A stretch of 64,000 nucleotides of DNA from Octopus sinensis (Eukaryota). The translations under genes were made by a program, and so were the position numbers. The DNA lies in NCBI RefSeq assembly GCF_006345805.1, contig NC_043020.1, forward strand, positions 11,098,001 through 11,162,000, given 5' to 3'. Position 1 is the stretch's first letter, and every line of letters begins with the position of its first letter. Under the pieces are notes generated by a model that worked only from the letters and a program-made list of their open reading frames with translations, made no database searches and was not told the DNA's origin. Below, piece after piece: positions 11,965 through 64,000 of the stretch.

Positions 11965-12557
11965 TATAATAATAATAATAATAATAATGAAATTATTGTA
12001 TAGAGTGCTCAGGTGCACCACAACTTGTCAGAAAGTGCGTATAAAGCATATGCAGTAATGTACAAATGTCTGGAAAGCGAACAATGTATGAGTCAGATAC
12101 ATGCTTGCGTGTGTATGGAGGGGAGGAAATCAGGTGTAGTGTTGGTGAATCTCAGAAAGCATGGAAGTTTTGAAGGATGCAGTGCTCCGACAACTAACAA
12201 CTGATGCCGGCAGTTTGTTCCATGCTTCAGCGTATGTATGGAGGGGAGAAAATCAGGTGTAGTGTTGGCGAATCTCAGAAAGCATGGAAGTTTTGAAGGA
12301 TGCAGTGCTCTGACAACTAACAACTGATGCCGGCAGTTTGTTCCATGCTTCAGCAACTCTCAGCGTGAAAAAATGTTTCCGAAAGTCATGGGAGCTGTGC
12401 TGTTTTCTGACTTTGTAAATATGTCCACGGGTGTTAGACGGGTGGAGTTTGAAAAGGTGCTCAGAGTTATTGCTTGTAAGATGGTTAATAATTTTATGGG
12501 TGTCTGCCAAGTCAGTTGCCAGACGTCGGAGTTTCAATGTGTCCATGCCCAGGGAAG
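11965..12557 (-). mobile_element. CR1-clade LINE 3' end with (ATT)n tail and internal ~115-bp duplication
   Basis: TLKLRRLATDLADTHKII...TRGHIYKV...FFTLRVAEAWNKLP is the CR1/L2 RT C-terminal motif; a partial repeat follows at 12633-12790. Confidence 0.9.
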
Positions 12558-12944
12558 TAAGATGATGATGATGATACACACTTACACACAAATGGGCTTC
12601 CACACAGTTTCCATATAACAAATTCTACTGTAAATGGAGCTGTGCTGTTTTCTGACTTTGTAAATATGTCCACGGGTGTTAGACGGGTGGAGTTTGAAAA
12701 GGTGCTCAGAGTTATTGTTTGTAAGATGGTTAATAATTTTATGGGTGTCTGCCAAGTCAGCTGCCAGACATCGGAGTTTCCATGCCATTTATGTCAAGCA
12801 TCTTGACATAATCACCCATGCTACACTCGGCCTTTTGCAGCTCTTCATCAAACACAGGTGCCTTCTCAACTTGTCACGTGCAGCCAAATTCCAAACTTAG
12901 TACCAATCTACCAATCACATATTATCAATATCAATTACATCATT

Positions 12945-15747: not shown

Positions 15748-16705
15748 AGAATTTTTTTTCCCTGTAAGTTTGGATTTATATTCCCTCAAATAATAATTAT
15801 ATATATATTTATATATATTCGGATGAATATGGTACTTAAGTTGAGGCACCAGAATTTAGTATGGTATTATCCATACAATTTCAAAATAAGGTGATGAAAA
15901 TCAAAATAAGCAACAAGGATATCCAGAGGTAATGCAGTACGATCGTTTCATGCGACTCCATTTAATTGAACAATGCAATCATTTCATTACATCAATTTAA
16001 AATGCAGAGCAATCTTCAGCTGCACAAAGACATAGAATTTAATTAAATTAGAACAGAAGGACACATTAGTATAATTTTACCTAAGATCGCCAATAAATTA
16101 AGGAGATAGACAAAGAACATGTTGTACCTACAACATCATAGTTGTAACTGAAATTTTCTCAAGAAGACACTGCCTGTCACTGATATTTTGTTATTTTGTT
16201 TCTTTTTTTATGGGGTCAGTTTTAATTTATAGATTAGTTTATCAAATCCTTTATATATTTAAGGCTGAGAGAAAACAGAGGGTAGTATCTGTTTGGGGTA
16301 GAGTTGATGGAGTAGACAGATATTATAGATAGTATAATCATAAAATCAAGATTTATTAGAAGCAATGTCATGAGGTTTAGTATGGGAAAATTTAAAACAA
16401 GATGTTAGCTGATAATTAAGGGATCGCCCACTAGCAAACCATTGATAATGAAACAGGGGAAATCTTATGTAGTACTACAGTTAAATACTATAAGCAATGC
16501 TGCTATATTTTATACAGATAAAGTTTAAGGTTATTCAAAAGATTATTAAGAAGAATATTGTAACAAAAAGGATAGAAATTTATGAATACTTTTGAGTATA
16601 TATCAAACTTTTATCACAATAGAGGGAGAAATATAGAAATAGTTTAATATATTTATACATATTGTATACTTAAATACTAACTTATCAGATGGTATCTGTG
16701 AATAT

Positions 16706-16945
16706 ATAAAAAGGCGGCGAGCTGGCAGAACCGTTAGCACACCGGGCGAAATGTGTAGCTGTATTTCGTCTGCCGTTACGTTCTGAGTTCAAATTCCGCC
16801 GAGGTCGACTTCACCTTTCATCCTTTCGGGGTCGATAAATTAAGTACCAGTTATGCACTGGAGTCAATATAATCGACTTAATCCGTTTGTCTATCCCTGT
16901 TTGTCCTCTCTGTGTTTAGCCCCTTGTGGGTAGTAAAGAAATAGA
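16706..16945 (+). mobile_element. tRNA-derived SINE family B (representative, with 13-bp TSD)
   Basis: Head GGCGGCGAGCTGGCAG, B-box GAGTTCAAATTCC, central CCTTTCATCCTTTCGGGGTCGATAAA domain; TSD tatctgtgaatat at 16693-16705 and 16946-16958. Other copies approx. 7545-7740, 8095-8440(-), 23846-24000, 36117-36270, 45946-46173, 48965-49375. Confidence 0.9.
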
Positions 16946-20125: not shown

Positions 20126-22377
20126 GGATCTTTTCGATTTGAACGGCAGTTTTTTCTAGCGGTGTCATATGAAATTGTCACCCATAATTATGACCCTAGT
20201 ATCGATCTATTGCATTTCAATCTGTTTTAGGGTTAGGGTTAGGGGTTATTTTATTTTAAATGCAAAACAACACTACAGAAGAATCGACGTGAACTTAAAT
20301 AATAAACCGCATAGGTGAACTGCGATATGGTGAGGGCTTACTGTATTAATTATATGCGCAATTTCTCTTTCAGGTTACAAGGCTAGCAGTTTTGAGGAAA
20401 GGGGATTAGTCGATGCCATCGACCCCAGTACTTTGACTGTACTATATTTTATCCACGCCAGCAAAATAGTAAATCCACAGTAGTTTTTAAAGGGTCTGTA
20501 GTGTAGACTATATATTTGTGCATTCAAACGTAGCAGGGACCAACTGGCTTTCAGTCGCTGTTTGTATCCAGTTGTGTCCACTACTCTGATTGGTTGATAT
20601 TGGCGCAATTTGTCCCCTACTCTGTTGTGCCTACTGACCGCGGACAGCCAGTCAGAGACTTTAGATAGCATCACGTGAACAGCCTTTTTCGAACCCTATT
20701 TCGAGCCTACTACTTTCTATAAAATCCCAGCTTTTTCCTCGTCACCTCATCATGCGGTCGCTACGGGTCCTTAAAAGAAACAGCTCGGTTTCTTTTTCTA
20801 AAATTTTAAACAATTCAACACATTGCGGATCACTGATGCATGTTCCCTCAGAGAGTGGTATTGCAAATCCTATACGAGTGGATACTATTTAAGAAGAGTG
20901 GTCCCGGTGCGCGTACTCGCGCATCCGCGCTAGCTAGTCGTGACAAGTCGATCCTACAACGACTACCTAGCAAAGTAAATAAAACACAAAATAAATAATT
21001 TTTTTACACAAAGCAAATAATTTTTTTAAATAAAGTAAATAAAACACAAAGTAAATAATTTTTTAAAACAAAGTAAATAAAACACAAAAACACAAAGTAA
21101 GGATCGTTAGTTAGGGGTTGGGGAAGGGTATCTTTTTTTCTTCACAAATGTAAATAAACCCAATCTGTTTCTTAAAGGAGGGACATATTCATTATGCACA
21201 GAATGTTATTTACGTCAATGGAGGTAATTGATTGGTTAAAATTGCCGAAATGCAAGAAATTTCAAACGAAATATGTTACTACCTATAGAATTTTCTCAAT
21301 AAAACCAAGAGAAAATGATGTTTTATAAACACATTCTACCAGTATACGAAGTTTAAAACTTTTTAGCTACCTAGAAATTATGTTACAAAGTGCCGTTCAA
21401 AAGGAAAAGATCCGGATCGACTAGATAGCGCGGATGCGCGAGTGTGCGAGTGCGCGCACCGGGACCTCTCAAAATAGTACCTACGAGTGAACGTATGAAG
21501 AACGAAATAGAAATTTTGAAAGAAGTAGCGAAAAAACTAGCTTTTAAACAATGAATGGCCGTGAGTGTTCACCAGAATAAAATAGTGAATCAAAGGAGTC
21601 GATTGATAAAAAAAAAAACGGTTGAGAACCACCAAGTCAAATGATGATATCGGGCTAAAACCCTTCACCTTAAAACTCTAAGCCGAGTTCCTCAATTTGA
21701 CACTATTATATACTGTTTGTGTGCGGGTGAGTGAGAGAGAAAGAAAGAGCGAGAGTGTGGGAGATGAAGTGAGAGGAGAGAGAAAGAGAGCGAGAGTGGG
21801 GAGAATAAGTGTGGGTATAATCTGCTGCGTGAAGAGGAAGACGATAATAAATAGCGAAAGTAAATGTTTACCAAGTCAACAGTTTCATTCACATTCACTC
21901 ATTTTTATTTACTCATTTATTTAAAATAGCACGTTGTCCAACCATTCATTTAGAAGCATAATGTAAATCCAATCGCTTAGCAACAGTATGTCGTCACAGG
22001 GTCTACGTCACATATCTCCGCCCACACAGACCGAGATAGAGAGAGATAAGAGAGAGAGAGAGAGAAGAGATAGACAAATACACACATGAATGAGAACGAC
22101 GTTCGTACACATACTGACATAAACACACACGCATCAATTAACACACATACACACACACACATACATATATTTAGAGTGTATTCAAGGGAGATAACCCTCA
22201 GTTGTATCAAGACGGAACCCGGAGACTGTCAAAGAGAAGCGAAGACAGAGCGAGAGAAATCACTTGATGCATCAAAGAGAAATCATCACGTATCGATTCC
22301 AAATCCTCCATTTTAAAAACAAAAAAAAAAACAACCACTTTATTCACCAATTATCCACCTTCGTCATACATCCGCTC

Positions 22378-22708
22378 ATGTTTCCTTTACTGAATTCCCC
22401 GAGCCGTTTTAAGAACTACGATGTCAGCCCTTCACGTTCTGGCCCGTTCTTGGGCATCGTTCTTTCATCGTTCCTATTGTTATCAATAACGCCTCAAAGA
22501 ACCGAAGCAGCTGTTTCCGATGCTGCGAAATTCTCGTCGAATGCCGACCTCGTCCATCACAATTACGACCAAATGGTCGCTTTGCTGGACGAGGTACACA
22601 GCAAATGTCCCGACATCACGTTGGTCTATAACCCTCCTGGACATTCGGTCGAAGGGAGAAATTTAACTGTCATTGAATTCAGCGACGATCCTGGAAAACA
22701 CATTGCTG
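22378..22708 (+). CDS. CPE: M14B metallocarboxypeptidase (carboxypeptidase E-like) coding exon 1
   Basis: Hydrophobic signal segment FLGIVLSSFLLLSI, then HHNYDQMVALLDEVHSKCPDITLVY...SVEGRNLTVIEFSDDPGKHIA(G). Phase-1 donor G|gtaggt. The start ATG is uncertain (an in-frame ATG also exists at 22267). CPE versus CPD/CPM cannot be settled from two exons. Confidence 0.85.
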
Positions 22709-22765
22709 GTAGGTACCACATACCATTTTTTTTTTAGAAGCCTTCTTCTTCTGATTCTGCTTCTG

Positions 22766-22992: not shown

Positions 22993-24417
22993 TTAGTGTC
23001 GGGCTGGGCTCTTTACGTTCTAGTTTCAAAACCCATCGAGGTCAACTTCGCCTTCCTTCCAGCCCTCCGCGGACCGTTAAAATCAAGTACCCCAGTCGAG
23101 TAACTAGAGACGATTATATCGACGAACACCTTTCTCCGAAATATTGTTGGGCTTGTCTCTAAATCAGAAGCCACTATTAGAATCTGTAGAACACCGGAAC
23201 CAGACGAAATACCTTGGGTTATTTAGTCACGTTCCCTTACATTCTGAGTTCAAATTCTGCCAATGTAGACTTTATCGATTATCTTCCCAGGGTCAGTAAA
23301 ATCTGTTCCTGTCAAGTACTGGTTCGAGTTAACCGTGTTTTCTCTTTGTCCCTGAATCTGGCGCTGTTTTGTTTAAAGGTCGAAACCATTCTTTGTTTAT
23401 AACATATAATACGATTCTCTCTCACTCTATATATATATATGATCTTCGCGTCGATTTTGATCGAACTTTTATATATCTATTAATATATATATATACATAT
23501 AAGGTTTTGGCGACAAGCCTTAAGAAGCTAAATGGCAATGTGACGGTGAAATAAGCTTCTTTAATTACGAAATTAATCAGTTTTTTAAAAATTTCCATTG
23601 AAACCAGACATTACAATTATACCATTATGGCTTTTATGTATATAACAATATGTTATAAATTGTTCTCGTTAAGCAGCGTTAATTTTATAATTATACCTCA
23701 ATTACGAGGAAGTAATTTATCAGTTTGAGGCAAAATTGTAGGTCTCGTTACGAAACACAAGCACCAATTTTATTTTTTAAGTGTTTTTTAGGTATTATTA
23801 TTGTTGTTGTTGTTGTTCTTGTTATCATTATTATTGAGCTGGCAGAGTCGTTAGCGCACCAGGCGAAATGCTTAGCGATATTTCGTCCGTCTGTTCTGAG
23901 TTCAAATTCCGCCAAGGTCGACTTTGCCTTTCAGCCTTTCGGGATCGATAAAATAAGTACCAGTTGAATGCTGGGGGTAATCGATGGAATCGACTTTCCC
24001 CCTCCCCACGAAATAACTGGTCTTGTGCTAAAATTTGAAATTATTTACATCGACCTCAGTGCACCACTGGTACTTATTTAATCGACCCCGAAAAGATATA
24101 AAAGGCAGAGTCAACCTCGGCGAAATTTGAACTCAGAACTTAGTGGTATTTAATCTATTGCTATGAGAGAATATGTTTCAAGGCTGGAAATATTACTATC
24201 TTTTACTCTTCTACTTGTTTCAGTCATTTGACTGTGGCCATGCTGGAGCACCGCCTTTAGTCGAGCAAATCGACCCCGGGACTTATTCTTTGTAAGCCTA
24301 GTACTTATTCTATCGGCCTCTTTTGCCGAACCGCTAAGTGACGGGGACGTAAAGACACCAGCCTCGGTTGTCAAGCGATGTTGGGGGGACAAACACAGAA
24401 CACAAATATATACACAC

Positions 24418-24468
<51 letters not shown>

Positions 24469-26414
24469 CATACATACATACATACATACATACATACATA
24501 CATACACACACATATACGACGGGTTTTTTTTCAGTTTCCGTCTACCAAATCCACTCACGAGGCTTTGGTCGGCCCGAGGCTATAGTAGAAGACACTTGCC
24601 CAAGGTGCCACGCAGTGGGACTGAACCGGGAATCGTGTGGTTGGTAAGCAAGCTACTTACCACACAGCCACTCCTACGCCTACATATGTTGAGAAATATG
24701 TGGTAGAAAGAAACCATAAAAATACTACGTAGAAATCCAGTATACTACTTTGCTTGAACGGACCCCACCAAATTCTATATGGACTCCACCCCGCCAGCGG
24801 TCATAAGGAGCTGGTTGAGAACTTCTGATCTAGATGAAAAAAATATATTTTGGGAGAGAAAGTGAAATAGCTTGATAAATAAATAGGGAAAGAGAGTTGA
24901 AAATAAGAAGTTAAAAGAAAGGTAAATGAACAATAACGTGGGGACAAGTGAATTCTAAGACTCACTCTTCGGTGACACAAATTTCAAATTTTTGCGCAAA
25001 GCTACAGACTCAAAATGGGTGTGCATAGTCAATGGAACGGACCCTAGTAAACGCCTATTGCTATTTGTTCATGGGCCCCCCGTAAGTATAAAGGGCGGCG
25101 GAGTTTCGGATCAGGACTCCTGCACAAGTTAGATTTTTCCAAGTCTTTTTCTTTCCATTTCGTTCGTGAGGGTGTTAATGGGCGGAGGACAGCTTTTTAT
25201 GAAAATATTTTTAACCATATTGTTTGAAAGTTTTGATTTTTTTTTCTCCTCACCACGCTTTGTGTGTGTGTGTTTACGCACTTAAAAATGTTGGGAGAAA
25301 CCTTTTAGGTTGAAAAAAATAAAACCGAAAAAAATTTTCCAAATGTTTTCAGACGAAAAAAAAAAAATGTGTGATTTAAGGGAGATTTAGCTGTTGTTTC
25401 TAGCACATACACATATATATATATATGTATACATATATACGACGGACTTCTTTTAGTTTCCGTCCACCGAATCCACTCATAATACTTTGGTCGGCCCGAG
25501 GCTATAGTAGAAGACACTTGCCCAAGGTGCCATGTACTGGGACTGAACCCAGAACCATGTGGTTGGTAAGCAAGCTACTTACCTCACAGCCACTCCTACG
25601 CCTATACTCTTTTACTCTTTTACTTGTTTCAGTCATTTGACTGCGGCCATGCTGGAGCACCGCCTTTAATCGAGCAACTCGACCCCGGGACTTATTCTTT
25701 TGTAAGCCCAGTACTTATTCTATCGGTATCTTTTGCCGAACCGCTAGTTAACGGGGACATAAACACACTAGCATCGGTTGTCAAGCAATGCTAGGGGAAC
25801 AAACAGACACACAAACACACACACGCGCATATATACATATACATATATACGACGGGCTTCTTTCAGTTTCCATCTACCAAATCCACTCACAAGGCTTTGG
25901 TCGGCCCGAGGCTATAGTAGAAGACTCTTGCCCAAGGTGCCACGCAGTGTGACTGAACCCGGAACCATGTGGTTAGTAAACAAGCTACTTACCACACAGC
26001 CACTCCTACGCCTATTTGTAGAAAATTTCATTAAAAGAATATCCATTTTTCTGGAAGTTATGAAGCAACAAAATCGGCGGGGTACACATGTGAAGGTATA
26101 CAATGGTATTTATTTATTCTACCATCATAAATATTAAATCTAATAAATACACCAACTAAAAGAAACGGTTGTAGTTTGGAGAAATTTCAACCTGATTTTT
26201 GTTTTAGAATGATTGGGGGAGATACTCATTTGAAGTGATTGAACAGATCGATGATAAATGAAAGTATAATTCGATTATTTATTGATGGCACAATTTAGCC
26301 AGAATATGTCAATGTAACCATCTATTTATATTAAAAATGAATGTATACTTTTGAGCGGGAGGATGTATATAGAAACAAAACGAACACCAGACTTCAGAAT
26401 CTGTGCGATTATTG

Positions 26415-36095: not shown

Positions 36096-36833
36096 TTTTC
36101 AATATTTCTGTCAGTAAGGCGGCGAGCTGGCAGAAACGTTAGCACGCCGGGCGAAATGCGTAACCGTATTTCGTATGCCGTTACGTTCTGAGTTCAAATT
36201 CCGCTGAGGTCGACTTTGCCTTTCGTCCTTTCGGGGTCGATTAAATAAGTACCAGTTACGCACTGGGGTCTTTACTCTTTACTCTTTTACTTGTTTCAGT
36301 CATTCGACTGTGGCCGTGATGGAGCACCGTCTTTAGTCAAGCAAATTGACCCCAGGACTTATTCTTTGTAAGCCTAGTACTTATTCTATCGGTCTCTTTT
36401 TGCCCAACTGCCAAGTTACGGGGACGTAAACACGTCAGCATCGGTTGTCAAGCGATGTTGAGGGGACAAACACAGACACACAAACATATACACACGCATA
36501 CACATACATACATATATATATATATACACATATATACGACGGGCTTCTTTCAGTTTCCGTCTACCACTCACAAGGCTTTGGTTGGCCCAAGGCTATAGTA
36601 GGAGACATTTGCTCTAGGTGCCATGCAGTGGGACTGAACCTGGAACCATGTGGTTGGCAAGCAAGCTACTTACCACACAGCCACTCCTACACCGATAAAT
36701 GAAATTTTTTATGTTTTTCCATTTGGTGCGTAAATGTAAAGATTGTTTCTACTTCCTACGCTTGAACATCCAATGTAAATCTGACCGTGGGTGAGGCAGC
36801 GCTCTTCGAGGTATAAACCAGCAACTGAAAATG

Positions 36834-43519: not shown

Positions 43520-43800
43520 AATTGCAGTGTAGAAGGTGTTTATAAGCCATTTAAGAAACACACAAAAACCATTAGATTCACTTCAACATTGAAGTTTAAT
43601 TTGTCAAAATATTTTCGTCGCATAGACCGCGACCTGTTCACTGACAAAAATCTGAGATGCAGCACGGATTTTTGTCAGTGAATAGGTTGCGGTCTTATAG
43701 TGACGAAAATATTTTGACAAATTAAACTTAAATGTTGAAGTGAATCGAACGGCTTTTGTGTGTTTCTTAAATGGCTTACAAACACCTTCCATGCTGCAAT
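43520..43800. repeat. ~280-bp imperfect palindrome (MITE-like or Penelope-like foldback)
   Basis: Arms gcagtgtagaaggtgtt...tgacaaaaatc and their reverse complement flank a ~14-nt loop. Confidence 0.8.
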
Positions 43801-45768: not shown

Positions 45769-45787
45769 ATGTATGTATATGTAAGGA

Positions 45788-45930
45788 CGGGGGATCACTC
45801 GGCTTGTCTATCGATGAAGAGCGCGGCTATCCACATGAACTGATGCGAATTGCAGGACTCAGTGAACATCGACACCTCGAACGCACATTGCGGCCCCGGG
45901 ATCCTATCGTCCCGGGGCCCCGTCTGGTCG
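45788..45930 (+). pseudogene. Dispersed, near-full-length 5.8S rRNA-derived sequence
   Basis: Contains the conserved 5.8S blocks GGATCACTCGGCT, TCGATGAAGAGCGC, GAATTGCAGGAC, ATCGACACCTCGAACGCACATTGCGGCCCCGGG and the GC hairpin. No flanking 18S, ITS or 28S sequence. Confidence 0.88.
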
Positions 45931-46894
45931 ATAGGTATCTTACACCGGCGAGCTGGCAGAAACGTTTGCACGCCGGGCGAAATGCGTAGCCGTATTTTGT
46001 CTGCCGTTACGTTCTGAGTTCAAATTCCGCCGAGGTCGACTTTGCCTTTCATCCTTTCGGGGTCGATTAAATAAGTACCAGTTTCGCACTGGGGTCGATA
46101 TAATCAACTTAATCCGTTTGTCTGTCCTTGTTTGTTCCCTCTGTGTTCAGCCCCTTGTGGGCAATAAAGAAATATGTATGTATATGTAAGTTCATATACA
46201 CATATGAACTTACACATATATACATATGTATGTGCGTATGTATGTACACATGTACAAACAGACATGTATGTATGTACATACATATATACATCATTATTAC
46301 ATCAATCTTTATTTGCACTGTGAACAGAGAGATTTAAAATGATGACTTGCATATTTATTCATAATACCTTCCAGCAAATTTGAATGCAAATATGCTAGTT
46401 ACTGTTGTGTATGTCACAGGAAAACAGCCTCTCTTTCCTCTTTGCCACAGTGATGTGTTCATAACAAGCTTCTTTGGAGGAGGGGGTTCTAGAGCGCCAC
46501 TGTTTCGGCTTACGCCTTGTCAGCCAAAAGCACACAGACCTTTCGATCTAAACAAGAGCTGGTGGCTTTGTTTATAATTCGTGCAAAATGTTCACTGATT
46601 TATGATGATATTTGCCAACCAATAATTAAATCGATAGTTGCCCTGTGAACAGTGAGATCTGAAACAACAGCTGTATGTGTGTACATGTAGGTACATATGT
46701 ATGTATAAACACATATATATGTATATATATATACATGTATGTATGTAGGTATGTATGTACATATATAAATATGTGTGTGTATATCTATATATCTATATGT
46801 ATGTTTGTGTGTGTGTATATATATATTATATATAATATATATATATATATCATCATCATCATCATCGTTTAACGTCCGTTTTGCGATGATGATG

Positions 46895-47212: not shown

Positions 47213-49877
47213 GTGTGTGGGTGTAGTGTGTGTGACTGCCACCTGATTTCTCACCGGCATTGTCTTATCTTCTTGGAGATACCAATAATTTATGTTTGCT
47301 TTCTCTCCTAAGTGTGATTAACGAAGAGCCAGCTTTACTCCTACTGATACCCTCATTTGTTAACCCCCCCACCATCTAACATACAAAGGCAATACAATCT
47401 CTCCCCAGGTTTGCTGACTTGCGAGCTACATGATGACCACAATAGTCCTAGCAGCATAAAAAAAAAAAATCATCCAGTGCACACTGTGAAGTGGTTGGTA
47501 TTTGGAAGGGCATCCAGCTGTAGAAACCATGCCACAGTGGACACTAGAGTAATTTGCCGTCCTTGACTCATTGGATCCTTGTCAAACTGTTCAACATCTA
47601 TCAGCATGGAACATCATCATCATCATTTAACGTCCGCCTTCCTTGCTAGCATGGGTTGGATGATTTGACTGAGGGCTGGCGAACTAGATGGTTGCACCAG
47701 GCTTCAATCTTGATCTGGCAGAGTTTCTACAGCTGGATGCCCTTCCTAACACCAACCACTCCGAGAGTGTAGTGGGTGCTTTTTACGTGCCACCGGCATG
47801 GGGGCCAGTCAGGCGGTACTGGCAATTTTTTTACACATACCACCGGCACAGGTGCCAGTGAGGCGACGTTGGTTTTACATGCCACGGGTACGAAATCCAG
47901 TTGGCTGCTCTGGCAACGATCACGCTCAGATGGTGCTCTTGGCACCCTACTAGCACTGGCATAAATTTGATTTTGATTTTGGATGATGATGATGGTGATA
48001 TATATCCTCATATGAGCGGCTGTGTGGCAAGACGCTTGCTTCCCAACCACATGGTTCTGGGTTCAGTCCCACTGTGTGGCAGCTTGAGCAAGTGTCTTCT
48101 ACTATAGCTTTGGGCCGACCAAAGCCTTGTGAGTGGATTTGGTAGACGGAAACTGAAAGAAGCCCATCATACATATATATATATATATATATATATGTGT
48201 GTATGTTTGTGTGTCTCTGTTTGACCCCACCCCACCACCATAGCTTGACAACTGATGTTGGTGTGTTTATGTCCCTGTAACTTAGCAGTTCAGCAAAAGA
48301 GACCAAAAAACAAGTACTGGGCTCACAAAGAATAAGTTCTGGGGTCGATTTGCTCTACTAAAGGTGATGCTACATCATGGCCGCAGCCAAATGACTGAAA
48401 CAAGTAAAAGAATAAAAGAATATAAAACCTTTCAGCATCTGACACAAGATCACCTCCTCCAATGCCCCCTTCCCTCCCAAAATTCCTTGTCTTGCATGTT
48501 ACTCGGTGACCCTGCTGATGCTGGTGCCATGTAAAAAGCATCCAGTCCACACTATAAAGTGGTTGGCATTTCAAAGAGTATCTAGCTATAAAAACCATGC
48601 CAAAACTAACCTCACCGTGCTGGTGCCACTTAAAAAGCATTCAGTCCACTTTGTGGGGTGGTTGGTGTAAGAAACAGCATGCAAATGTAAAAACCTTACC
48701 AAAACAGACACAGTAGTCTGGGGTACTCTTCTACCTGGCCAGTTCCTATCAAACCATCCAACCCATACCAGCATGGAAGACAGACATTGAAAACGATGAT
48801 GATGAGGATAAACAATGATGATACATACATACGTACATACATACATATATATATTTAGACAGACAAATGCATGTATGTATGTATGTATATGATGGTGGAT
48901 GTGATATGAAGAAAATTTGACTATTTCTTGCTAATCATTGTACAGATGTAGCAGGGTAAAGGTGTCGAGCTGGCAGAAACGTTAGCACACCCGGTGAAAC
49001 GCTTAGTGGTATTTCATCTGCCGTTACGTTCTGAGATCAAATTCTGCTGAGGTCAACTTTGCCTTTCATCCTTTCGGGGTCGATAAATTAAGTACCAGTT
49101 ACACACTGGGGTTGATATAATCGACTTAATCCATTTGCCTGTCCTTGTTTGTCCTCTCTGTGTTTAACCCCTTGTGGGTAGTAAAGAAATAGGTATTTCA
49201 TCTGCCGTTACGTTCTGAGTTCAAATTCCGCTGAGGTCGACTTTGCCTTTCATCTTTTTGGGGTCAATAAATTAAGTACTAGTTACGCACTGGTGTCGAT
49301 GTAATCGACTTAATCCATTTGTCTGTCCTTGTTTCTCCCCTCTGTGTGTAGCCCCTTGTGGGCAGCAAAGAAATAAGATGTATCAGAGATGAAGCCACTT
49401 GTACTCTAAACTGTTCCTGCACTTAAAGTGAAAAACTACCCGTTGATGAAGTTCTTAAGAAAATATATGAAACCAACATTTTAATCTGTAATGCAAAAAG
49501 TAATTTAAAAGAGGATTAGAGAATTAATCTTTAAAGATTAAAAATAAATTAGATTTCTTGTCGCACATGAATTCTCCACCCCCTTGTTGGGTGGTGTCAA
49601 AGATCCCGTGGTTCATGAGAGGTGGGTGAGAAGGGTTAAAGTGGGACAGACCTGCAAAACAAGATTTCACAAATTCTTAAGTGTTTACTTTTCTCATGAT
49701 AAGAAAGTTAAACATCACAACAGGACTTCTTTTGAGATTTAGTTACTGGTGGTGGGGGGTAATAGAGGCAGCAGCAGCGGTGGTGGTGGTGGTGGGGTTG
49801 GCAGTGTTGTTGGTGGTGGTGGTGGTAAAGACGTTGGTGGTAGTGGTGGTGATGGTTGTGGCAATATTAGTGATTGT

Positions 49878-50890
49878 GAAGGCGGCAAGCTGGCAGAAAC
49901 GTTAGCACGCCGGGCAAAGTGCTTAACGGTATTTCGTCTGCTGTTATGTTCTGAGTTCAAATTCCACCAAGGTCGACTTTGCCTTTCATCCTTTCGGGGT
50001 CGATAAATTAAGTACCAGTTACGCACTGGGGTCGATGTAATCAACTTCATCCCTTTGTCTGTCCTTGTTTGTCCCCTCTATGTTTAGCCCCTTCTGGGCA
50101 ATAAAAAAATAAGAAACATTAGCACGCCGGGCGAAATGCTTAGCAGTATTTCGTCTGCCTCTACATTCCGAGTTCAAATTCCGCCGAGATCGACTTTGCC
50201 TTTCATCCTTTCGGGGTCGATAAATTAAGTACCAGTTACTCACTGGGGTCGATGTAATGAACTTCATCCCTTTGCTTGTCCTTGTTTGTCCCCGCTATGT
50301 TTAGCCCCTTGTGGGTAGTAAAGAAATAGGTATTTCTTCTATCTTTATGTTCTGAGTTCAAATTCCACCGAGGTTGACTTTGCCTTTCATCCTTTCGGGG
50401 TCGATAAATTAAGTACCAGTTACGCACTGGGGTCGATGTAATCAACTTCATCCCTTTGTCTGTCCTTGTTTGTCCCCTCTATGTTTAGCCCCTTGTGGGC
50501 AATAAAGAGATAAGAAACATTACCATGTCAGGCGAAATGCTTAGCGGTATTTCGTCTGTCTTTACATTCTGGTTCAAATTCCTCCCGAGGTCGACTTTGC
50601 CTTTCACCCTTTCGGGGTCGATAAATTAAGTACCAGTTACGCACTGAGGTCGATATAATTGACTTAATCTGTTTGTCTGTCCTTATTTGTTCCCTCTGTG
50701 TTTAGCCCCTTGTGGGTAGTAAAGAAATAGGTATTTCGTCTGTCTTTATGTTCTGAGTTCAAATTCCACCCGAGGTTGACTTTGCCTTTCACCCTTTCAG
50801 GGTTGATAAATTAAGTACCAGTTGCAAACTTGGGGGTCGATCTAATCGACTGGACCCCTCTCCAAAAATTTCAGGCCTTGTGCCTAGAGT
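49878..50890 (+). repeat. Head-to-tail array of ~5 SINE-B units
   Basis: The GAGTTCAAATTCC...GGGGTCGATAAATTAAGTACCAG...GCCCCTTGTGGG unit repeats about every 185-235 bp. Confidence 0.9.
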
Positions 50891-51653
50891 AGAAAAGAAT
50901 ATTAGTAATTGTAATGATGGTTAGTGGTATTGGTGGTGGTGGTGGTGGTGGTGGTGGTGGTGGTGGTGGTGGTGGAAGTGGCGGCAGTGGTGGTGGTAGC
51001 CACTGTGGCTGTGGTGGATGGAGGCATCCACCTGCCCACACTTCTGTGTGTTTAATCGTTTTGGATTTAAACCGGCCACATCCGGCCAAAAGTATTCAGC
51101 CTGTTTTATGTTCAAACTGGCCAGATCTAGTCTCTCACACCAACCCTACAATATCGTTTGAAAAATGAACAGCTACCTCATCAAAATCTCATAGCTACAA
51201 GATAATGCCTGATTAGTTCAAAACAATGTGGATAAAAAAGGATTAATTTTGGCAGAATAATGTGAACACTAAAGGGTTAATCATTTTGGATTTTAGCTGA
51301 TAATTTGCTGAAGAGGGAAAGACAGACAGTCAAACAGACAGCACAGAATCTGTGTCAGGTGCCCTATAAACTCAATCAAGTTTTCAAATATAGGCCGTGT
51401 TTGAGTGTTGCCTTATTACGAGAGAATGGTTAGGCGAATACGGCTGTTGGACTGGAACACACTATGCTAGTCTCTCTTTCTCTCTCTCTCTCTCTCTTGC
51501 AATAAAAGAAGGATGTCTACCAGAAAATTCTCTCTCTTTGTGTCTCTCACCCTTTCTCTCTCTCCCTTTCTCTCTCACTCTCTGTCTCTCTATGTGTGTG
51601 TACGTGTACGTGCTGAACTAAGTATCTCCCTCTCTTTCTTTCTCCTCTCTCCA

Positions 51654-55400: not shown

Positions 55401-58189
55401 AACATTGTCCATATATTTTGTGTTCTTGATTATGTTGTTTGTTTGTTTGTGTGCGTGTATGTGTGTGTAACAGGAAACATTATCAATTGTATGTGCATGC
55501 GTATGTGTATGTGTATGTGTAAGCTTATCTATTTAAATGTATAGAGAATACCTGTCACTGTAATATGCAAATAGAAAATACAAATACCCATTAAAGACTC
55601 TTGTTTTGTCAACATAGTGTAACCACACACCAACACCACTATCCTTGCCTCCCCCACCATTCTCAAAAAAGATTTGTTCTTTCATTAAACAAGATAATGT
55701 ACCCTGAGGTCCTTGAAATTAAGGCTGACACTTTGGAATATATATCTTCATTATCATCATCATCATCATCATTTAGCGTCCAGCTTTCCATGCTGGCATG
55801 GGTCGGACGGTTCGACTGGGGGGGGTCTGGGAAGCCAGAAGGCTGCACCAGGCTCCAGTTTGATCTAGCAATGTTTCTACGGCTGGATGCCCTTCCCAAC
55901 GCCAACCACTCCATGAGTGTAGTGGGTGCTTTTTACGTGCCTCTGGCACAGGTGCTAGGCGAGGCTGGCAACGGCCACGATCGGTTGGTGCTTTTTACGT
56001 GCCACTGGCACGGAGGCCAGTCAGGGCAGCGCTGGCAACGGCCACATTCGGATGGTTCTTCTGGAATATATATCTTCATTATCATCATCATCATCATTTA
56101 GCGTCCAGCTTTCCATGCTGGCATGGGTCGGACGGTTCGACTGGGGGGTCTGGGAAGCCAGAAGGCTGCACCAGGCTCCAGTTTGATCTAGCAATGTTTC
56201 TACGGCTGGATGCCCTTCCCAACGCCAACCACTCCGTGAGTGTAGTGGGTGCTTTTTACGTGCCACCTGCACAGGTGCCAGACGGGGCTGGCAAACGGCC
56301 ACGATCAGACAGTGCTTTTTACGTGCCACCGTCACGGGGGATCAGACGAGGCTGGCAAACGGCCACGATCGGATGATGCTTTTTACGTGCCACCATCACG
56401 GGGGTCAGACGAGGCTGGAAATGGCCACAATTGGATTTCTCAAAAAAGATTTGTTCTTTCATTAAACAAGATAATGTACTCTGAGGTCCTTGAAATTAAA
56501 GCTGACACTTTGGAATATATATCTTCATCATCATCATCATCATTTATTAACGTCAGTTTTCGATTCTGATTTGAGGGTTGGGTTGTTTGATAGGATATGA
56601 TAAGCCACACAGCTGTGTTGAGCTTCAATGTATGACCGTATGCCCTTCCTATCACCAATCACTTTACGGTATGTACTGGGCTAAGTGCTTTTTATGTAGC
56701 ACCGGCACTAGTGGGGTTGCCAGATAATTTGCAAGACCGGAAAGGAAAAGAATGAGCAACGTGGGAGAAAAAGGAAAATCCCTCTCAAGTAATTGGTAGT
56801 AGTAGGAGTATTCGAGGGGTGGGGGAAGAGGTGTTTTTTTTACATCAGAGACAAGCAGAAGTGCTATAGAGAAAATATATAGTTATGGCTACCCTTCATT
56901 AAATATAAGAATGGCAGGAGTTACTGAGAAAAAGAATATATAGGCGCAGGAGTGGATGTGTGGTAAGTAGCTTGCTTACTAACCACATGGTTCCGGGTTC
57001 AGTCCAACTGCGTGGCATCTTGGGCAAGTGTCTTCTGCTATAGCCCCGGGCCGACCAATGCCTTGTGAGTGGATTTGGTAGACGGAAACTGAAAGAAGCC
57101 TGTCGTATATATGTATATATATATACATATATATATATGTATGTGTGTGTATATGTTTGTGTGTCTGTGTTTGTCCCCTAGCATTGCTTGACAACTGATG
57201 CTGGTGTGTTTATGTCCCCGTCACTTAGCGGTTCAGCAAAAGAGACCGATAGAATAAGTACTGGGCTTACAAAGAATAAGTCCCGACTAAAGGTGGTGCT
57301 CCAGCATGGCCGCAGTCAAATGACTGAAACAAGTAAAAGAGTATACATATATGTGTATGTATATATGTATGTATATATATATATACATATGTATATGAAT
57401 TAATGTTTGTCATCACTTCAACATGGCTGTTCTGCACAAACCAGAGTTACTACTCTTTTTGACCCCAAGAGGAAGCCTCCTCTAGCTAGTCATCAAGACA
57501 ATCTGCACCCAACATATATTGCAAGCAGGGGAGTGAACCCCTACCATCTTCTAGTGACTCAGCAAGACCAGCAGACTGTCTGGTTTCAGGCTATTTTTGC
57601 CCATCCTCAGTGCTTGATACCTGTCTGCTAGAGATAGCAGTAGTTTGCTCCAGCTAACAGTATATAGAAAAATGAAAGGGAATAAAGAAAGTTTTACAAA
57701 AAGACCATTATATTTCAGGCACAAGGGTCTATCTTTTGATACAATATATAGAGAAAGTTCCTATTACACACACAAATAAATATATACAAGCACAGAATAT
57801 ATGGACTGTTTCCTTTTTGAGGATGGATCTTTGTGCCTGAGTTTTTCGTAAAACTGCCTGCATTGTTAAAATCTTGCTTTATTTCTCTTTCCTTTCATTT
57901 TCTACTTCTGGACTACAATGCTTCAACCACTTCAATGCTCATTTGTCCGGATGTTTTGTGTTCTTATCATTGGCGATTTTTTTTTTCCTCTGTCTTCCCT
58001 TCTTCAGATCTTTCCTTTTCCTATGTTTCTGACAAAGAGCTCCACTCGAAACGTTAAATCCTCCTTCTTTCTTTCCTTTCCTGAGCATCCAATAACACTA
58101 TACTTGTTCCATGTCCTCGCGTTGTTGTGTTTTCTCTTTGTGTATTCATGTTTGGATTAACTATATATATATATATATATTATATATAT

Positions 58190-60577: not shown

Positions 60578-61093
60578 TCTCTATATATAAAACTGTAGTT
60601 GTGTGAGTGTCTGTCTCCTACGATTTAGATTCCTAACTCCTCCCACATTTTGCGGTGCAGTTTAACCAAATTCGGGTATCTTATAGTCGTGATTAATATC
60701 GAGCCCGTCTGGCTATTAGCGTGCGTCTGCGATGAGTCTACGATTTTAAAAATAATTAACATAATTTTTTATTCCATTTTAATGCATAATTTTTCGTGTG
60801 TCGATGGCGGCGGAGTTGGCGTCCACGCTCAAACACCTGCACCACCGTTTTGCTTCTCCCCCTTCTTCCCTCCCTCGTGAAGCTGTGGGGAAGGGAGTGT
60901 AAGGAAATCAACGTCGTAATGCGTTGTCAAGGAGACCAGCGTTCTTTTAGAACAACGACTTCATGGCTTGAAGACACCAAACAGAAATGGCTAAGAAAGC
61001 CCGAATTGGCATCTATAAGGGAAGTAACTCTCTAAAAATGCTTATATAGTTATTTCCCTTACAAACCCGAGCAACGCTGGGCGATACTGCTAG
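60578..61093 (+). mobile_element. Non-autonomous Helitron
   Basis: A|TC 5' end, subterminal hairpin CCCGAGCAACGCTGGG, CTAG|T 3' end, no TSD. Confidence 0.85.
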
Positions 61094-61179
61094 TTAATAT
61101 ATAATATATATATTTATACTGTAAAATTAGATTTTATCCTAATCTAATTTTTCCCTGTAAGTTTGGATTTACTCCCTAA

Positions 61180-61241
<62 letters not shown>

Positions 61242-61244
<3 letters not shown>

Positions 61245-61737
61245 TTATATATAAAAGAGAGGTTGTGTGTCTGTCTCCTACGATTTAGATTCCTAACTAC
61301 TCCCACATTTTGCGGTGCAGTGTAACCAAAACCGGGTATCTTATAGTCGTGATTCATATCGAGCCCTTCTGGGTATTAGCGGGCGTCTACGATGAGTCTA
61401 CGATTTAAAAAAATTTACCATCATTTTTTTCCCATTTTAATGCATTTTTTCGCTATTATATAAGGGAAGTAACTCTCTAAAAATGTCTACGATGACTCAA
61501 CGATTAAAAAAAAAATTTACCATAATTTTTTTCCATTTTAATGCATTTTTTTCGCTATTATATAAGGGAAGAGTAACTCTAAAAATGTCTACGATGAGTC
61601 AACGATTTAAAAAACAAAAATTACCATAATTTTTTTCCATTTTATGCATTTTTTTGCTATATTTTGGCTATAACTCTATAAAATGCTTATATAGTTATTC
61701 CCTTACAAACCCGAGCAACGCCGGGCGATACTGCTAG
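61242..61737 (+). mobile_element. Non-autonomous Helitron, variant with internal tandem repeats
   Basis: Same termini (A|TC ... CCCGAGCAACGCCGGG...CTAG|T); the internal part is ~3 copies of a ~85-bp unit. Confidence 0.85.
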
Positions 61738-61753
61738 TATATATATATATATA

Positions 61754-62242: not shown

Positions 62243-63304
62243 TTGTGTGTCTGTGTTTGTCCCCCTAGCATTGCTTGACAACCGATGCTGGTGTGTTTAT
62301 GTCCCCGTCACTTAGTGGTTCGGCAAAACAGACCGATAGACTAAGTACTGGGCTTACAAAGAATAAGTGCCGGGGTTGAGTTGCTCAATTAAAGGCGGTG
62401 CTCCAGCATGGCCACAGTCAAATGACTGAAACAAGTAAAAGAGTAAAAGAGTAAAGAGTAGTTGGAACTATAATTCCAAAACTTACAGGGAAAAATTCAA
62501 TTTAACAATTTTAAATAAAATTTCACAATATATAATATATATATATAATATATAATATATATATACAATATATAATATATATATAAAATTTCACAATATA
62601 TAATATATATATATAATTTAGAGAAAAAGCACCCAGTACATTCTTTGGAGTAGCTGGTATCATGAAGGGCATCCAGCTGTAGAAATCATGCTAGACCCTA
62701 CAATGGAACCCGGTAAGGTAATTGTCCTAACCAGGTCCAGTGGAATCGTCCAACCCAACCAAAATGAATGTTGAATGATGATGATTGATACATACATACA
62801 TACATACATACATACATACATACATACATGCATGCATGCATGCATGCATGCATGTATGTATGTATGTATATATAATTTAGAGAAAAACCACTATTAAACA
62901 ATTCAATAAAGAAAGATGTTATTCACACCATATAGAAATCATATACTATAAAAATGTATTCATGCTAGACCCTACAATGGAACCCGGTAAGGTAATTGTC
63001 CTAACCAGGTCCAGTGGAATCGTCCAACCCAACCATGGAAAATGAATGTTGAATGATGATGATTGATACATACATACATACATACATACATACATGCATG
63101 CATGCATGCATGCATGCATGTATGTATGTATGTATATATAATTTAGTTTCTACAGCTGGATGCCCTTCATGATACCAGCTACTCCAAAGAATGTACTGGG
63201 TGCTTTTTGTGTGATGTGTGTGTGTGTGTGTGTTTATATGTATATAGGGAAATAATGTATTCTTTTAAACACCCTCACTTTTCATTATTCAATTTCTGTT
63301 GCAG

Positions 63305-63510
63305 GGGAACCGGAGTTTAAATATGTCGCCAACATGCACGGCAACGAAGTGGTTGGACGAGAGATGCTGCTCCAGCTGGCTGTGTACCTGTGCAAGCAAT
63401 ACAAAGCAGGAAACGAGACTATCCAGTGGCTCGTTGACCATACTCGTATACACCTGATGCCGTCGATGAACCCTGATGGGTGGGAATTGGCCCATAAACA
63501 CCTGAAATCT
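63305..63510 (+). CDS. CPE: M14B carboxypeptidase exon 2 with the HxxE zinc-binding motif
   Basis: Acceptor tttctgttgcag|GG GAA CCG completes Gly with exon 1. Reads [69 protein letters not shown]; donor gtaagt at 63511. Intron 1 is 40,596 bp. Confidence 0.92.
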
Positions 63511-64000
63511 GTAAGTCCAAATTCTCCATCCCAGTTCTACCATTGTCTACCATCTCCATCGTACCACCACATGGTTAGGTGCCACTGTTTTTGTTCTGTC
63601 TGTTTGTTTGTTTTCCTTGTTGCTTTTATCTTTCACTTGTTTCAGTCAATGGATTGTGGTCATACTGGAGTAACTCCAGTACTTATTTGCAGTCCGACAC
63701 TTTCGTTTTCAGAACTGCTATGTGGATGCAAACTAACCAACACTGGTTGTCGAGTGGTAGTAAGGGACAGACACAAAGACTCAGATACATGTATATATGT
63801 GTGTGTATGTGTTTTGTGTGTGTAGTATGTACATACATATGTGTGTGTGTGTTTTGTGTGTGTAGTATGTACATACATATGTGTGTATGTGTATGTGTGT
63901 GTGTGCAAGTGTGGCTGTAGTAAGAAGAAATTGCTGGCCTTGTGCCAAAATTTGAAATCATTACTATTATCAGCACTACAGTGGCAAGCTGGAGAATTTC

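What the first reader, a model, noticed from the sequence alone, without database searches (positions are those of the whole stretch)
45769..46190. Chimeric 5.8S rRNA + tRNA-SINE retrocopy enclosed by one 17-bp target-site duplication
Seen in sequence: a near-full-length 5.8S rRNA-like sequence (45788-45930) is fused through a ~15-nt junction to an almost complete family-B SINE (45946-46173). The two-part unit is flanked by the identical 17-mer atgtatgtatatgtaag (45769-45785 and 46174-46190). Established: LINE machinery makes chimeric retrocopies by template switching (e.g. U6-L1). Known SINE heads derive from tRNA, 7SL, 5S, U1/U2 snRNA and 28S. Inference: this is either a single template-switch event between a SINE RNA and mature 5.8S rRNA, or a member of a 5.8S-headed SINE subfamily, a head type I do not know to be described. 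Caveat: the TSD is partly low-complexity.
Basis: partly seen in the sequence, partly recalled or inferred. Interest (0 to 1): 0.8.

Follow-up and report, generated by a model that had tools for sequence, protein, structure and literature searches.

The report
5.8S rRNA–SINE chimeric retrocopy
A decayed DNA copy of mature 5.8S ribosomal RNA is fused head-to-tail to a common short repeat (SINE) and was inserted as one piece into a gene intron, most likely because a retrotransposon's reverse transcriptase jumped from the SINE RNA onto a 5.8S rRNA; it is a tidy example of a known process and probably not a new repeat family.

Summary
Rfam places a full-model 5.8S rRNA match at 45779-45937 (92 bits, gathering score 42). 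It is the only rRNA-like sequence in the window. Real homology to genuine rDNA 5.8S runs from 45785/6 to 45935/8. A near-complete SINE (45946-46174, lacking its first 2-4 nt) follows after 7-10 nt of filler. This SINE has about 20 copies or fragments in the window.

The exact 17-mer ATGTATGTATATGTAAG occurs only twice in 64 kb, and it abuts both ends of the composite. Neither half alone has a target-site duplication. No ITS1 or ITS2 sequence flanks the 5.8S part, so it came from processed rRNA. Both halves show similar neutral decay, and two mutations break a 5.8S helix.

Best reading: one retrotransposition event, in which a LINE reverse transcriptase copied the SINE RNA and then jumped to 5.8S rRNA. 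This is a new member of the known class of LINE-mediated chimeric retrocopies.

The alternative, a 5.8S-headed SINE family, could not be tested. Controls showed that no accessible collection holds this host's DNA. In the window, none of the other four 5'-complete SINE copies carries a 5.8S head. The "tRNA-SINE" label was not confirmed by ARAGORN or Rfam.

The parts
45769..45785 (+). 5' target-site duplication ATGTATGTATATGTAAG. The last G may instead be the first retained 5.8S base (1-nt microhomology).
   Evidence: Exact 17/17 match to 46174-46190, and the only two exact occurrences in the window.
45786..45938 (+). Retrocopy of mature 5.8S rRNA. It lacks about 6-7 nt at the 5' end. Its 3' end lies at or within about 4 nt of the mature end (secure homology ends at 45935). 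It is a decayed pseudogene.
   Evidence: Rfam RF00002 at 92.3 bits. 89.4% identity to genuine rDNA 5.8S. No ITS1 or ITS2 homology on either side. Differences from real 5.8S are mostly CpG transitions, and two of them break helix pairs.
45939..45945 (+). Filler CTTACAC between the two RNA copies (up to 10 nt if TAT at 45936-45938 is counted). It matches neither 5.8S/ITS2 nor the SINE.
   Evidence: Alignments. The same 7-mer recurs at 46209-46215 in the 3' flank, inside a 13-nt inverted repeat.
45946..46173 (+). It runs from consensus position 3 to the canonical 3' end ...GGGCAATAAAGAAAT(A) and has no poly(A).
   Evidence: About 20 related copies in the window. Consensus alignment shows 6.9% divergence and subfamily variants shared with the copy at 36118-36270.
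46174..46190 (+). 3' target-site duplication ATGTATGTATATGTAAG. The first A may be the last base of the SINE tail.

Best explanation
This is a dead-on-arrival chimeric retrocopy made in one retrotransposition event.

Proposed sequence of events (inferred):
1. A LINE-encoded endonuclease and reverse transcriptase nicked the target at ...CATCCACC|ATGTATG... and began target-primed reverse transcription on a SINE RNA at its 3' tail (...AAAGAAAUA).
2. It copied the SINE RNA to within 2-4 nt of its 5' end.
3. It added or copied 7-10 extra nucleotides.
4. It jumped to the 3' end region of a mature 5.8S rRNA and copied it to within 6-7 nt of its 5' end.
5. The cDNA was joined to the upstream target end, possibly through a 1-nt G microhomology. 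Staggered second-strand cleavage produced the 15-17 bp target-site duplication.

The insert lies in sense orientation in a roughly 40-kb intron of a zinc carboxypeptidase (Peptidase_M14) gene, and it has since decayed neutrally.

Shown here: the parts, their limits and orientation, the single TSD, the absence of ITS sequence, and the pseudogene decay. Inferred: that the join was made by reverse-transcriptase template switching, that the 5.8S RNA came from the host's own ribosomes, and that the copy is unique.
For: (1) Single integration. The composite has a perfect 17/17 TSD abutting both ends. The SINE alone has at best 5 nt and the 5.8S alone at best 3 nt.

(2) TSD specificity. The 17-mer occurs only at those two places. 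A flank match of at least 16 nt arises at 0.54% of random placements. The other TSD-bearing insertions of this SINE have TSDs of 11-15 nt, or up to 17 on a wider reading, so 17 is close to the family range.

(3) Polarity. The 5.8S is 5' of the SINE and both are on the + strand. This is the order expected if cDNA synthesis starts on the SINE tail, and it matches features (iv) and (v) of LINE-made chimeras listed in PMC2104539.

(4) Breakpoints at natural RNA ends. Four other copies begin at the same AAGGCGGCGAG, and the focal copy begins 2-4 nt inside that. The 5.8S homology ends within about 4 nt of the Rfam model end.

(5) Processed RNA origin. Eight genuine rDNA types share conserved ITS1-end (AAACCCTG) and ITS2-start (AAAATKGCATGT) sequence that is absent from the focal copy.

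(6) Real rRNA source. Relative to those rDNAs the GC hairpin carries one compensated pair change (A-T to G-C) and one T.G to C-G change, which gives a perfect 9-bp stem.

(7) Pseudogene decay. There are eight CpG-type transitions. G-to-A changes at model positions 55 and 57 break two pairs of a helix that is intact in real 5.8S.

(8) Same age. Non-CpG divergence is 5/91 for the 5.8S against 8/193 private changes for the SINE (Fisher p = 0.76). Mutated CpG dinucleotides are 6/18 against 2/18 (p = 0.23).

(9) This SINE/LINE system makes composites. Two multi-unit SINE arrays, 48961-49375 and 49881-50896, each sit inside one TSD pair. Their units are no more alike than unlinked copies, and extra nucleotides occur at other 5' junctions.

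(10) No sign of a family in the window. None of the other four 5'-complete copies has a 5.8S head, and there is no second 5.8S fragment even in a permissive scan.
Against: - The 7-10 nt filler means the parts are not 'directly joined' as in classic chimeras, and a simple single jump does not explain it.
- The TSD is partly low-complexity, and the 3' flank is TG/TA-rich.
- The CpG decay of the 5.8S half looks heavier than that of the SINE half (6/18 against 2/18 dinucleotides), although the difference is not significant and the reference 5.8S comes from other, unidentified species.
- Uniqueness in the genome, the empty orthologous site and the host's own rDNA could not be examined.
- The partner LINE was not identified in the window.
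Confidence: 0.75

Rival explanations
1. Pre-formed fusion RNA. The 5.8S and SINE sequences were already on one RNA before reverse transcription. This could be through RNA ligation (as proposed for U6/L1), through a SINE inserted in ITS2 just downstream of 5.8S in one rDNA unit, or because the acceptor was a 3'-extended 5.8S precursor whose extra 7-10 nt are the start of ITS2. The LINE machinery then copied it in one pass.
For: A single TSD and a shared orientation fit this reading equally well. The 7-10 nt between the parts could be spacer sequence from such an RNA. Its length is similar to the short 3' extension of late 5.8S precursors (own knowledge, not tested).
Against: The first 12 nt of ITS2 (AAAATKGCATGT) are conserved across all eight reference rDNA types, and the filler does not resemble them. 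The SINE starts within 2-4 nt of the family's normal 5' end. That fits an end-to-end join of two separate RNAs better than a genomic SINE insertion with its own TSD. Mature 5.8S (3'-OH) and a Pol III SINE transcript (5'-triphosphate) are not obvious ligase substrates (own knowledge).
Confidence: 0.12
2. The locus is one member, or the founder, of a 5.8S-headed SINE subfamily that has amplified as a unit.
For: Not excluded, because no collection with host DNA was reachable. rRNA-derived SINE heads are known for 5S and 28S (PMC10946416). The 5.8S half shows a somewhat heavier CpG decay than the SINE half, as might happen if a master copy had drifted before this copy was made.
Against: In the window, none of the other four 5'-complete copies has the head. 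That includes the same-subfamily copy at 36118 (95% identical to the focal SINE). No second 5.8S fragment was found. The constant 5' end of the SINE copies implies that transcription starts at the SINE itself, so a daughter transcript would not include the upstream 5.8S (inference). 5.8S is cut from a Pol I precursor and has no known internal promoter (own knowledge). Non-CpG divergence of the 5.8S half is no greater than that of the SINE half.
Confidence: 0.06
3. Two independent insertions happen to be adjacent: a 5.8S retropseudogene, and a SINE that later (or earlier) landed exactly at its end.
For: SINE density is high here, about 20 copies or fragments in 64 kb, so nested or adjacent insertions are common.
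Against: Neither part has its own TSD (best matches 5 nt and 3 nt), while the pair together has a perfect 17-nt TSD exactly at the outer ends. The second insertion would have had to land within a few nucleotides of the first element's end and leave no duplication. A 5.8S RNA has no tail that this SINE's LINE partner would be expected to use (inference).
Confidence: 0.05
4. The feature is an artefact: an assembly chimera with rDNA reads, or a chance resemblance.
For: rDNA is multi-copy and can contaminate assemblies.
Against: The copy is 10.6% diverged from real 5.8S with a pseudogene-type mutation pattern. It lacks ITS flanks and is bounded by a TSD. The Rfam E-value is 1e-21.
Confidence: 0.02

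Closest known systems
LINE-mediated bipartite chimeric retrogenes (U6/L1, U3/L1, 5S rRNA/L1, 7SL/L1 and 28S/L1 in mammals; WEIRD/MGL and WEIRD/Mg-SINE in Magnaporthe) - PMC2104539, PMC4476161, bioRxiv 10.1101/2025.02.02.635956
   Same: A small, abundant cellular RNA forms the 5' part and a retroelement copy the 3' part. Both have the same orientation, one TSD encloses both, and the 3' part carries the tail that the LINE machinery uses. The proposed mechanism is a template switch during target-primed reverse transcription.
   Different: The 5' partner is 5.8S rRNA. It is not among the partners named in the papers I could search, although PMC2104539 lists 'ribosomal RNAs' generically. The 3' partner is an almost full-length SINE rather than a randomly 5'-truncated LINE. 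The parts are separated by 7-10 nt of filler. There is no poly(A). The host looks like a mollusc with a non-L1-type tail (the host was not verified).
Tripartite chimeras / double template jumps (Gogvadze et al. 2007, PMC2104539)
   Same: If the filler CTTACAC was copied from the target flank (46209-46215), the event involved two jumps within one TSD-flanked insertion.
   Different: The middle piece here is only 7 nt and may be chance or non-templated addition.
SINEs with rRNA-derived heads: SINE3/AmnSINE1 and others (5S rRNA), SINE28 (28S rRNA) - PMC10946416
   Same: An rRNA-derived sequence sits at the 5' end of a SINE-like unit.
   Different: Those are families with many copies, and 5S heads bring a Pol III promoter. 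Here only one copy is known, and 5.8S has no known promoter of its own. No 5.8S-derived element appears in that review's table of rDNA-derived transposable elements.
Solitary rRNA and small-RNA retropseudogenes, including tailless ones (PMC5322556)
   Same: It is a decayed DNA copy of a processed non-coding RNA that lacks precursor flanks.
   Different: The 5.8S copy has no TSD or tail of its own. It travelled on the SINE's 3' end.

Membership tests
LINE-mediated chimeric retrogene (features i-v of PMC2104539) | (i) The 5' part is a full-length copy of a cellular RNA | tested here: inconclusive
   The Rfam alignment spans model positions 1-154, but real homology to rDNA 5.8S starts at GGACGGGGG, 6-7 nt inside the expected 5' end, and ends 0-4 nt short of the 3' end. 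The copy is near-full-length, not complete.
LINE-mediated chimeric retrogene (features i-v of PMC2104539) | (ii) The 3' part is a 5'-truncated copy of a retroelement or other RNA that carries the 3' end used for priming | tested here: met
   The SINE starts at consensus position 3-5 and ends at the family's canonical AAAGAAATA, directly against the TSD. The truncation is minimal (2-4 nt).
LINE-mediated chimeric retrogene (features i-v of PMC2104539) | (iv-a) Both parts are in the same transcriptional orientation | tested here: met
   The 5.8S is on the + strand and the SINE is on the + strand.
LINE-mediated chimeric retrogene (features i-v of PMC2104539) | (iv-b) The parts are directly joined | tested here: not met
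   7-10 nt (45936/9-45945) match neither partner. Other insertions of this SINE also carry 1-7 extra nt at their 5' junction.
LINE-mediated chimeric retrogene (features i-v of PMC2104539) | (v) The chimera is flanked by short direct repeats | tested here: met
   A 17/17 TSD sits at the outer ends only.
   Metagenome, genome, viral and protein collections hold no DNA or ORFs of this SINE (controls), so the negative junction searches are uninformative. In the window, none of the other four 5'-complete copies has the head and there is no second 5.8S.
   Inference only. SINE copies share a fixed 5' end, which implies that transcription starts downstream of the 5.8S part. 5.8S is a Pol I product (own knowledge).
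Functional 5.8S rRNA gene (Rfam RF00002) | Scores above the family threshold | tested here: met
   92.3 bits against a gathering score of 42. Genuine genes fetched here score 117.4.
Functional 5.8S rRNA gene (Rfam RF00002) | Embedded in an rDNA unit (18S-ITS1-5.8S-ITS2-28S) with intact helices | tested here: not met
   There is no ITS, 18S or 28S sequence nearby. Two pairs of the helix at model positions 44-47/54-57 are broken. It is a pseudogene.
tRNA-derived SINE | The head is recognisable as tRNA-like | tested here: not met
   ARAGORN finds 0 tRNAs in the window. Rfam gives no tRNA match on two heads at E <= 10. Only a B-box-like GTTCAAATTCC and an A-box-like TGGCAGAAACG are present. The head may be a very diverged tRNA derivative; this does not affect the main conclusion.

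The most novel reading that the evidence does not exclude
The locus is a member or the founder of a SINE subfamily whose head derives from 5.8S rRNA. That head type is absent from the SINE and rDNA-TE literature I could search. It would imply that a Pol I-derived rRNA piece can be carried along and amplified by a SINE body.
Probability: 0.06. Interest if true: 0.7.

Novelty: new member of a known kind. Interest (0 to 1): 0.33.

Why it matters
The locus is a cleanly delimited natural record of end-to-end template jumping by a LINE reverse transcriptase that does not use poly(A) tails, in an invertebrate genome. The acceptor is 5.8S rRNA, which does not appear among the reported chimera partners I could find.

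Together with the multi-unit SINE arrays that each sit inside one TSD in the same window, it suggests that this SINE/LINE system makes composite insertions often. That is the raw material from which new composite SINEs arise. On its own it is a dead intronic pseudogene with no evident function.

Tried and rejected
(1) Proxy copy-number searches. Stop-free frames spanning the junction were searched against the 5.8-billion-cluster protein collection. The antisense frame hit only antisense ORFs of genuine 5.8S-ITS2 rDNA, and the sense frame hit nothing. A gapped DNA pattern for 5.8S...SINE-head found nothing in metagenome contigs.

All of these negatives are uninformative, because the controls also failed:
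- The SINE core gave 0 hits in metagenome contigs and viral contigs.
- It gave one 23-nt chance match in a bacterial MAG in genome contigs.
- The SINE's own antisense ORF had no relatives in the protein collection.
- Twenty window ORFs are absent from the collection.

(2) Getting the host's own rDNA. An exact look-up of a conserved 18S ORF returned only the three sources already in hand.

(3) Identifying the organisms behind the reference rDNA contigs from accession or sample identifiers, or from sequence strings, in the literature: nothing relevant to those contigs.

(4) Looking for a partner LINE in the window: long ORFs gave no reverse-transcriptase or endonuclease Pfam hits.

(5) The idea that the 5.8S differences are functional species variation was rejected for the helix at model positions 44-57, where pairs are broken, but accepted for the GC hairpin, where the changes are compensated.

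(6) The search of protein representatives was not used. It draws on the same protein collection, which the controls showed to lack this host.

Full report
**1. What is in the sequence**

Rfam's 5.8S rRNA model (RF00002) matches window 45779-45937 on the + strand at 92.3 bits (gathering score 42, E 1e-21) over the full model 1-154. It is the only match in the window that reaches any family's gathering score. A permissive scan of all 64 kb adds only microsatellite-driven miRNA false positives, and no second rRNA or snRNA fragment.

The segment that follows belongs to a short interspersed repeat with about 20 copies or fragments in the window. I aligned the copies together with their flanks. Four other copies that reach the 5' end all begin at (AA)GGCGGCGAGCTGG, and the family ends at ...AAAGAAATA with no poly(A). 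The focal copy starts at consensus position 3 (45946) and ends at the canonical 3' end (46173/4).

The 17-mer ATGTATGTATATGTAAG lies at 45769-45785 and 46174-46190. Those are its only exact occurrences in the window, and the 12 other near-matches all have 2 mismatches.

**2. Is the TSD more than chance?**

The window is rich in (TGTA)n and (TA)n arrays, so I ran a position-aware null. A 388-nt "element" was placed at every window position with +-2 nt slack at each end. It has a flank match of at least 16 nt at 345 of 63,552 positions (0.54%), and the examples listed lie inside microsatellite or tandem-repeat arrays. Here the 5' copy abuts non-repetitive sequence.

The composite as a whole has a 17/17 match exactly at its outer ends. 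The SINE alone has at best 5 nt and the 5.8S part alone at best 3 nt. Other insertions of this SINE in the window have TSDs of 13 nt (16713-16943), 11 nt with one mismatch (48961-49375) and 15 nt with one mismatch (49881-50896). By eye, the last may extend to about 17 nt with two mismatches. So 17 nt is close to the family range.

**3. Where the 5.8S part came from**

The antisense frame across the junction, used as a proxy query, retrieved antisense ORFs of genuine 5.8S-ITS2 rDNA. I fetched their contigs, which gave 17 rDNA loci with nine distinct 5.8S-flank sequences representing about eight ITS types. They come from two NCBI assemblies, Logan runs and marine metagenomes. Their 5.8S genes score 117.4 bits. 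I could not identify the organisms.

All of these loci share a derived 5.8S that is 89.4% identical to the focal copy over 45785-45935. They also share conserved flanking sequence...AAACCCTG before GGACGGGGG, and AAAATKGCATGT after ...GAGAGGCGG. The focal copy has neither. Its homology starts 6-7 nt inside the expected mature 5' end and stops within about 4 nt of the mature 3' end. The source was therefore processed rRNA, not an rDNA fragment or a long precursor.

The differences from the reference fall into two kinds.
- **Hairpin.** In the GC hairpin, the reference GGCTCCGAG/CTCGGGGCC becomes GGCCCCGGG/CCCGGGGCC. An A-T pair is replaced by G-C and a T.G pair by C-G, which gives a perfect 9-bp stem. 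These changes create CpGs and keep the pairing, so they most likely reflect the source species' functional 5.8S.
- **Elsewhere.** Outside the hairpin there are 8 CpG-type transitions, 1 other transition and 4 transversions. G-to-A changes at model positions 55 and 57 break two pairs of a helix that is intact in real 5.8S. That is pseudogene decay.

**4. Are the two halves the same age?**

Non-CpG divergence is 5/91 for the 5.8S half, outside the hairpin. For the SINE half it is 14/195 against the window consensus. After removing four subfamily variants shared with the copy at 36118 and two junction positions, 8/193 remain. Fisher's exact test gives p = 0.76. Mutated CpG dinucleotides number 6/18 against 2/18 (p = 0.23). 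The halves are compatible with a single age, but the test is weak and the 5.8S reference comes from other species.

**5. Mechanism**

Target-primed reverse transcription starts at the 3' end of the template. A second template picked up by the enzyme therefore ends up on the 5' side of the insert, in the same orientation. That is the arrangement seen here.

Both breakpoints sit at natural RNA ends. The donor SINE RNA was copied to within 2-4 nt of its 5' end, and the acceptor 5.8S was entered within about 4 nt of its 3' end. That is the signature of end-to-end template jumping rather than recombination at random internal sites.

The locus meets most of the features that Gogvadze et al. list for LINE-made chimeras (PMC2104539): same orientation, flanking direct repeats, a 5' part that is a nearly full-length cellular RNA, and a 3' part that carries the retroelement tail. 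It departs from them in two ways. The 3' part is almost untruncated, and 7-10 nt (45936/9-45945) separate the parts.

The filler CTTACAC does not resemble the conserved ITS2 start. It recurs exactly at 46209-46215, 19 nt beyond the 3' TSD. That site lies inside a 13-nt inverted repeat (46185-46197 / 46202-46214) whose left arm begins with the last 6 nt of the TSD. About 0.02 such matches are expected by chance within +-60 nt. The filler could be a short templated excursion onto target DNA, non-templated addition, or chance. I leave it unexplained. Other insertions of this SINE also carry 1-7 extra nucleotides between the 5' TSD and the SINE start.

**6. Supporting context**

Two multi-unit SINE arrays each lie within one TSD pair.
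- The array at 48961-49375 is a full unit followed by a unit starting at consensus position 49.
- The array at 49881-50896 has five units, starting at positions 1, 15, 49, 15 and 49, and the last has a different tail.

The tail|position-49 junction AAATAG|GTATTTC recurs at four places in three separate clusters: 49187, 50324, 50725 and 8234 on the minus strand. Units within an array are no more alike than unlinked copies (83-94% against 84-90%). There is therefore no sign of recent DNA-level duplication. Either this system concatenates RNAs often or dimeric masters exist. Either way, composite insertions are not rare for this SINE.

The focal element lies between Peptidase_M14 exons at about 22.6 kb and 63.3 kb on the + strand, so it is intronic and in sense orientation.

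**7. One-off or family?**

This is the question I could not settle. Junction-spanning proxy searches found no second copy. Controls show that none of the reachable collections contains this host's DNA or ORFs, so those negatives carry no weight.

Three lines of evidence bear on it.
- None of the other four 5'-complete copies in the window has a 5.8S head. That includes the copy at 36118, the closest relative of the focal SINE (95% identity and shared subfamily variants).
- The constant 5' end of the SINE copies implies that transcription starts at the SINE, so a daughter transcript would not include the upstream 5.8S (inference).
- The 5.8S half shows no excess non-CpG divergence, which a drifting master copy would produce.

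I put the family reading at about 6%.

**8. Comparison with what is known**

A 2024 review's table of rDNA-derived transposable elements lists 5S, 28S and IGS-derived elements but none derived from 5.8S (PMC10946416). A 2025 comparative survey of L1 chimeras lists U6, U3, U5, 5S, 28S, tRNA, 7SL, 7SK and Y RNA partners and does not mention 5.8S. My other searches found no 5.8S chimera either. PMC2104539 does name "ribosomal RNAs" generically as partners.

The locus is thus a new member of a known kind: a LINE-mediated chimeric retrocopy, with 5.8S rRNA and a SINE as its partners.

**9.

- The 5.8S extent is 45785/6-45935/8.
- The junction is 7-10 nt, not about 15.
- The tRNA origin of the SINE head is not supported by ARAGORN or Rfam. 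Only box-A-like and box-B-like motifs are present.
- That the host is an octopus was not verified with any tool.

Noticed in passing
48961-49375 and 49881-50896 (also 8093-8462, minus strand): There are head-to-tail SINE concatemers: a full unit plus units starting at consensus position 15 or 49. Each array is enclosed by one degenerate TSD pair (AGATGTAKCAG; AATATTAGTRATTGT). The junction AAATAG|GTATTTC recurs at 49187, 50324, 50725 and 8234(-). The last unit of the second array carries a different SINE family's tail. Units are no more similar within arrays than between loci.
   Followed up: partly
16693-16712, 48955-48960, 49878-49880: Other insertions of the same SINE have 1-7 extra, A-rich nucleotides between the 5' TSD and the SINE start (for example ATAAAAA at the 16713 copy). 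These may be a variable RNA leader or nucleotides added at the 5' junction.
   Followed up: partly
46185-46214: The target site carries a 13-nt inverted repeat (TGTAAGTTCATAT / ATATGAACTTACA) that starts within the 3' TSD. Its right arm overlaps the same 7-mer, CTTACAC (46209-46215), as the filler between the 5.8S and the SINE.
   Followed up: partly
22264-22737 and 63334-63825 (+): ORFs here contain exons of a zinc carboxypeptidase. They match Pfam Peptidase_M14 positions 1-46 (E 5e-5) and 55-109 (E 5e-17). The roughly 40 kb between them is a repeat-rich intron that holds the focal element.
   Followed up: partly
L001-L020 (rDNA loci fetched): A derived 5.8S type (GGACGGGGGATC...GCGCGGCCAGCCGCGAGAACTGATGCG...) is identical, except for two or three variable positions in the hairpin, across about eight ITS types. 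They come from two NCBI assemblies (GCA_041192925.1, GCA_052426985.1), Logan runs and Tara-type marine metagenomes. The organisms were not identified. The first 12 nt of ITS2 are conserved among them.
   Followed up: partly
43579-43742: There is a symmetric match on both strands to a plant miRNA precursor model (MIR6140, 73 and 69 bits, far below its gathering score of 140). This probably reflects a long palindromic or hairpin repeat such as a MITE.
   Followed up: no
9724-10210, 12391-12760, 24563-26000, 55660-56530, 60607-61740, 62686-63140: There are several tandem or segmental duplications with periods of about 245-922 nt (exact repeats of 26-93 nt at fixed spacing), apart from the many (TA)n, (TGTA)n, (ATT)n and (GGT)n microsatellites.
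   Followed up: no
23824-24060 and 50731-50896: A second SINE family shares the central domain (...CCTTTC.GGGTYGATAAA.TAAGTACCAGTT...) with the focal family. The 50731-50896 unit also shares the head region. The two families have different 3' tails.
   Followed up: no
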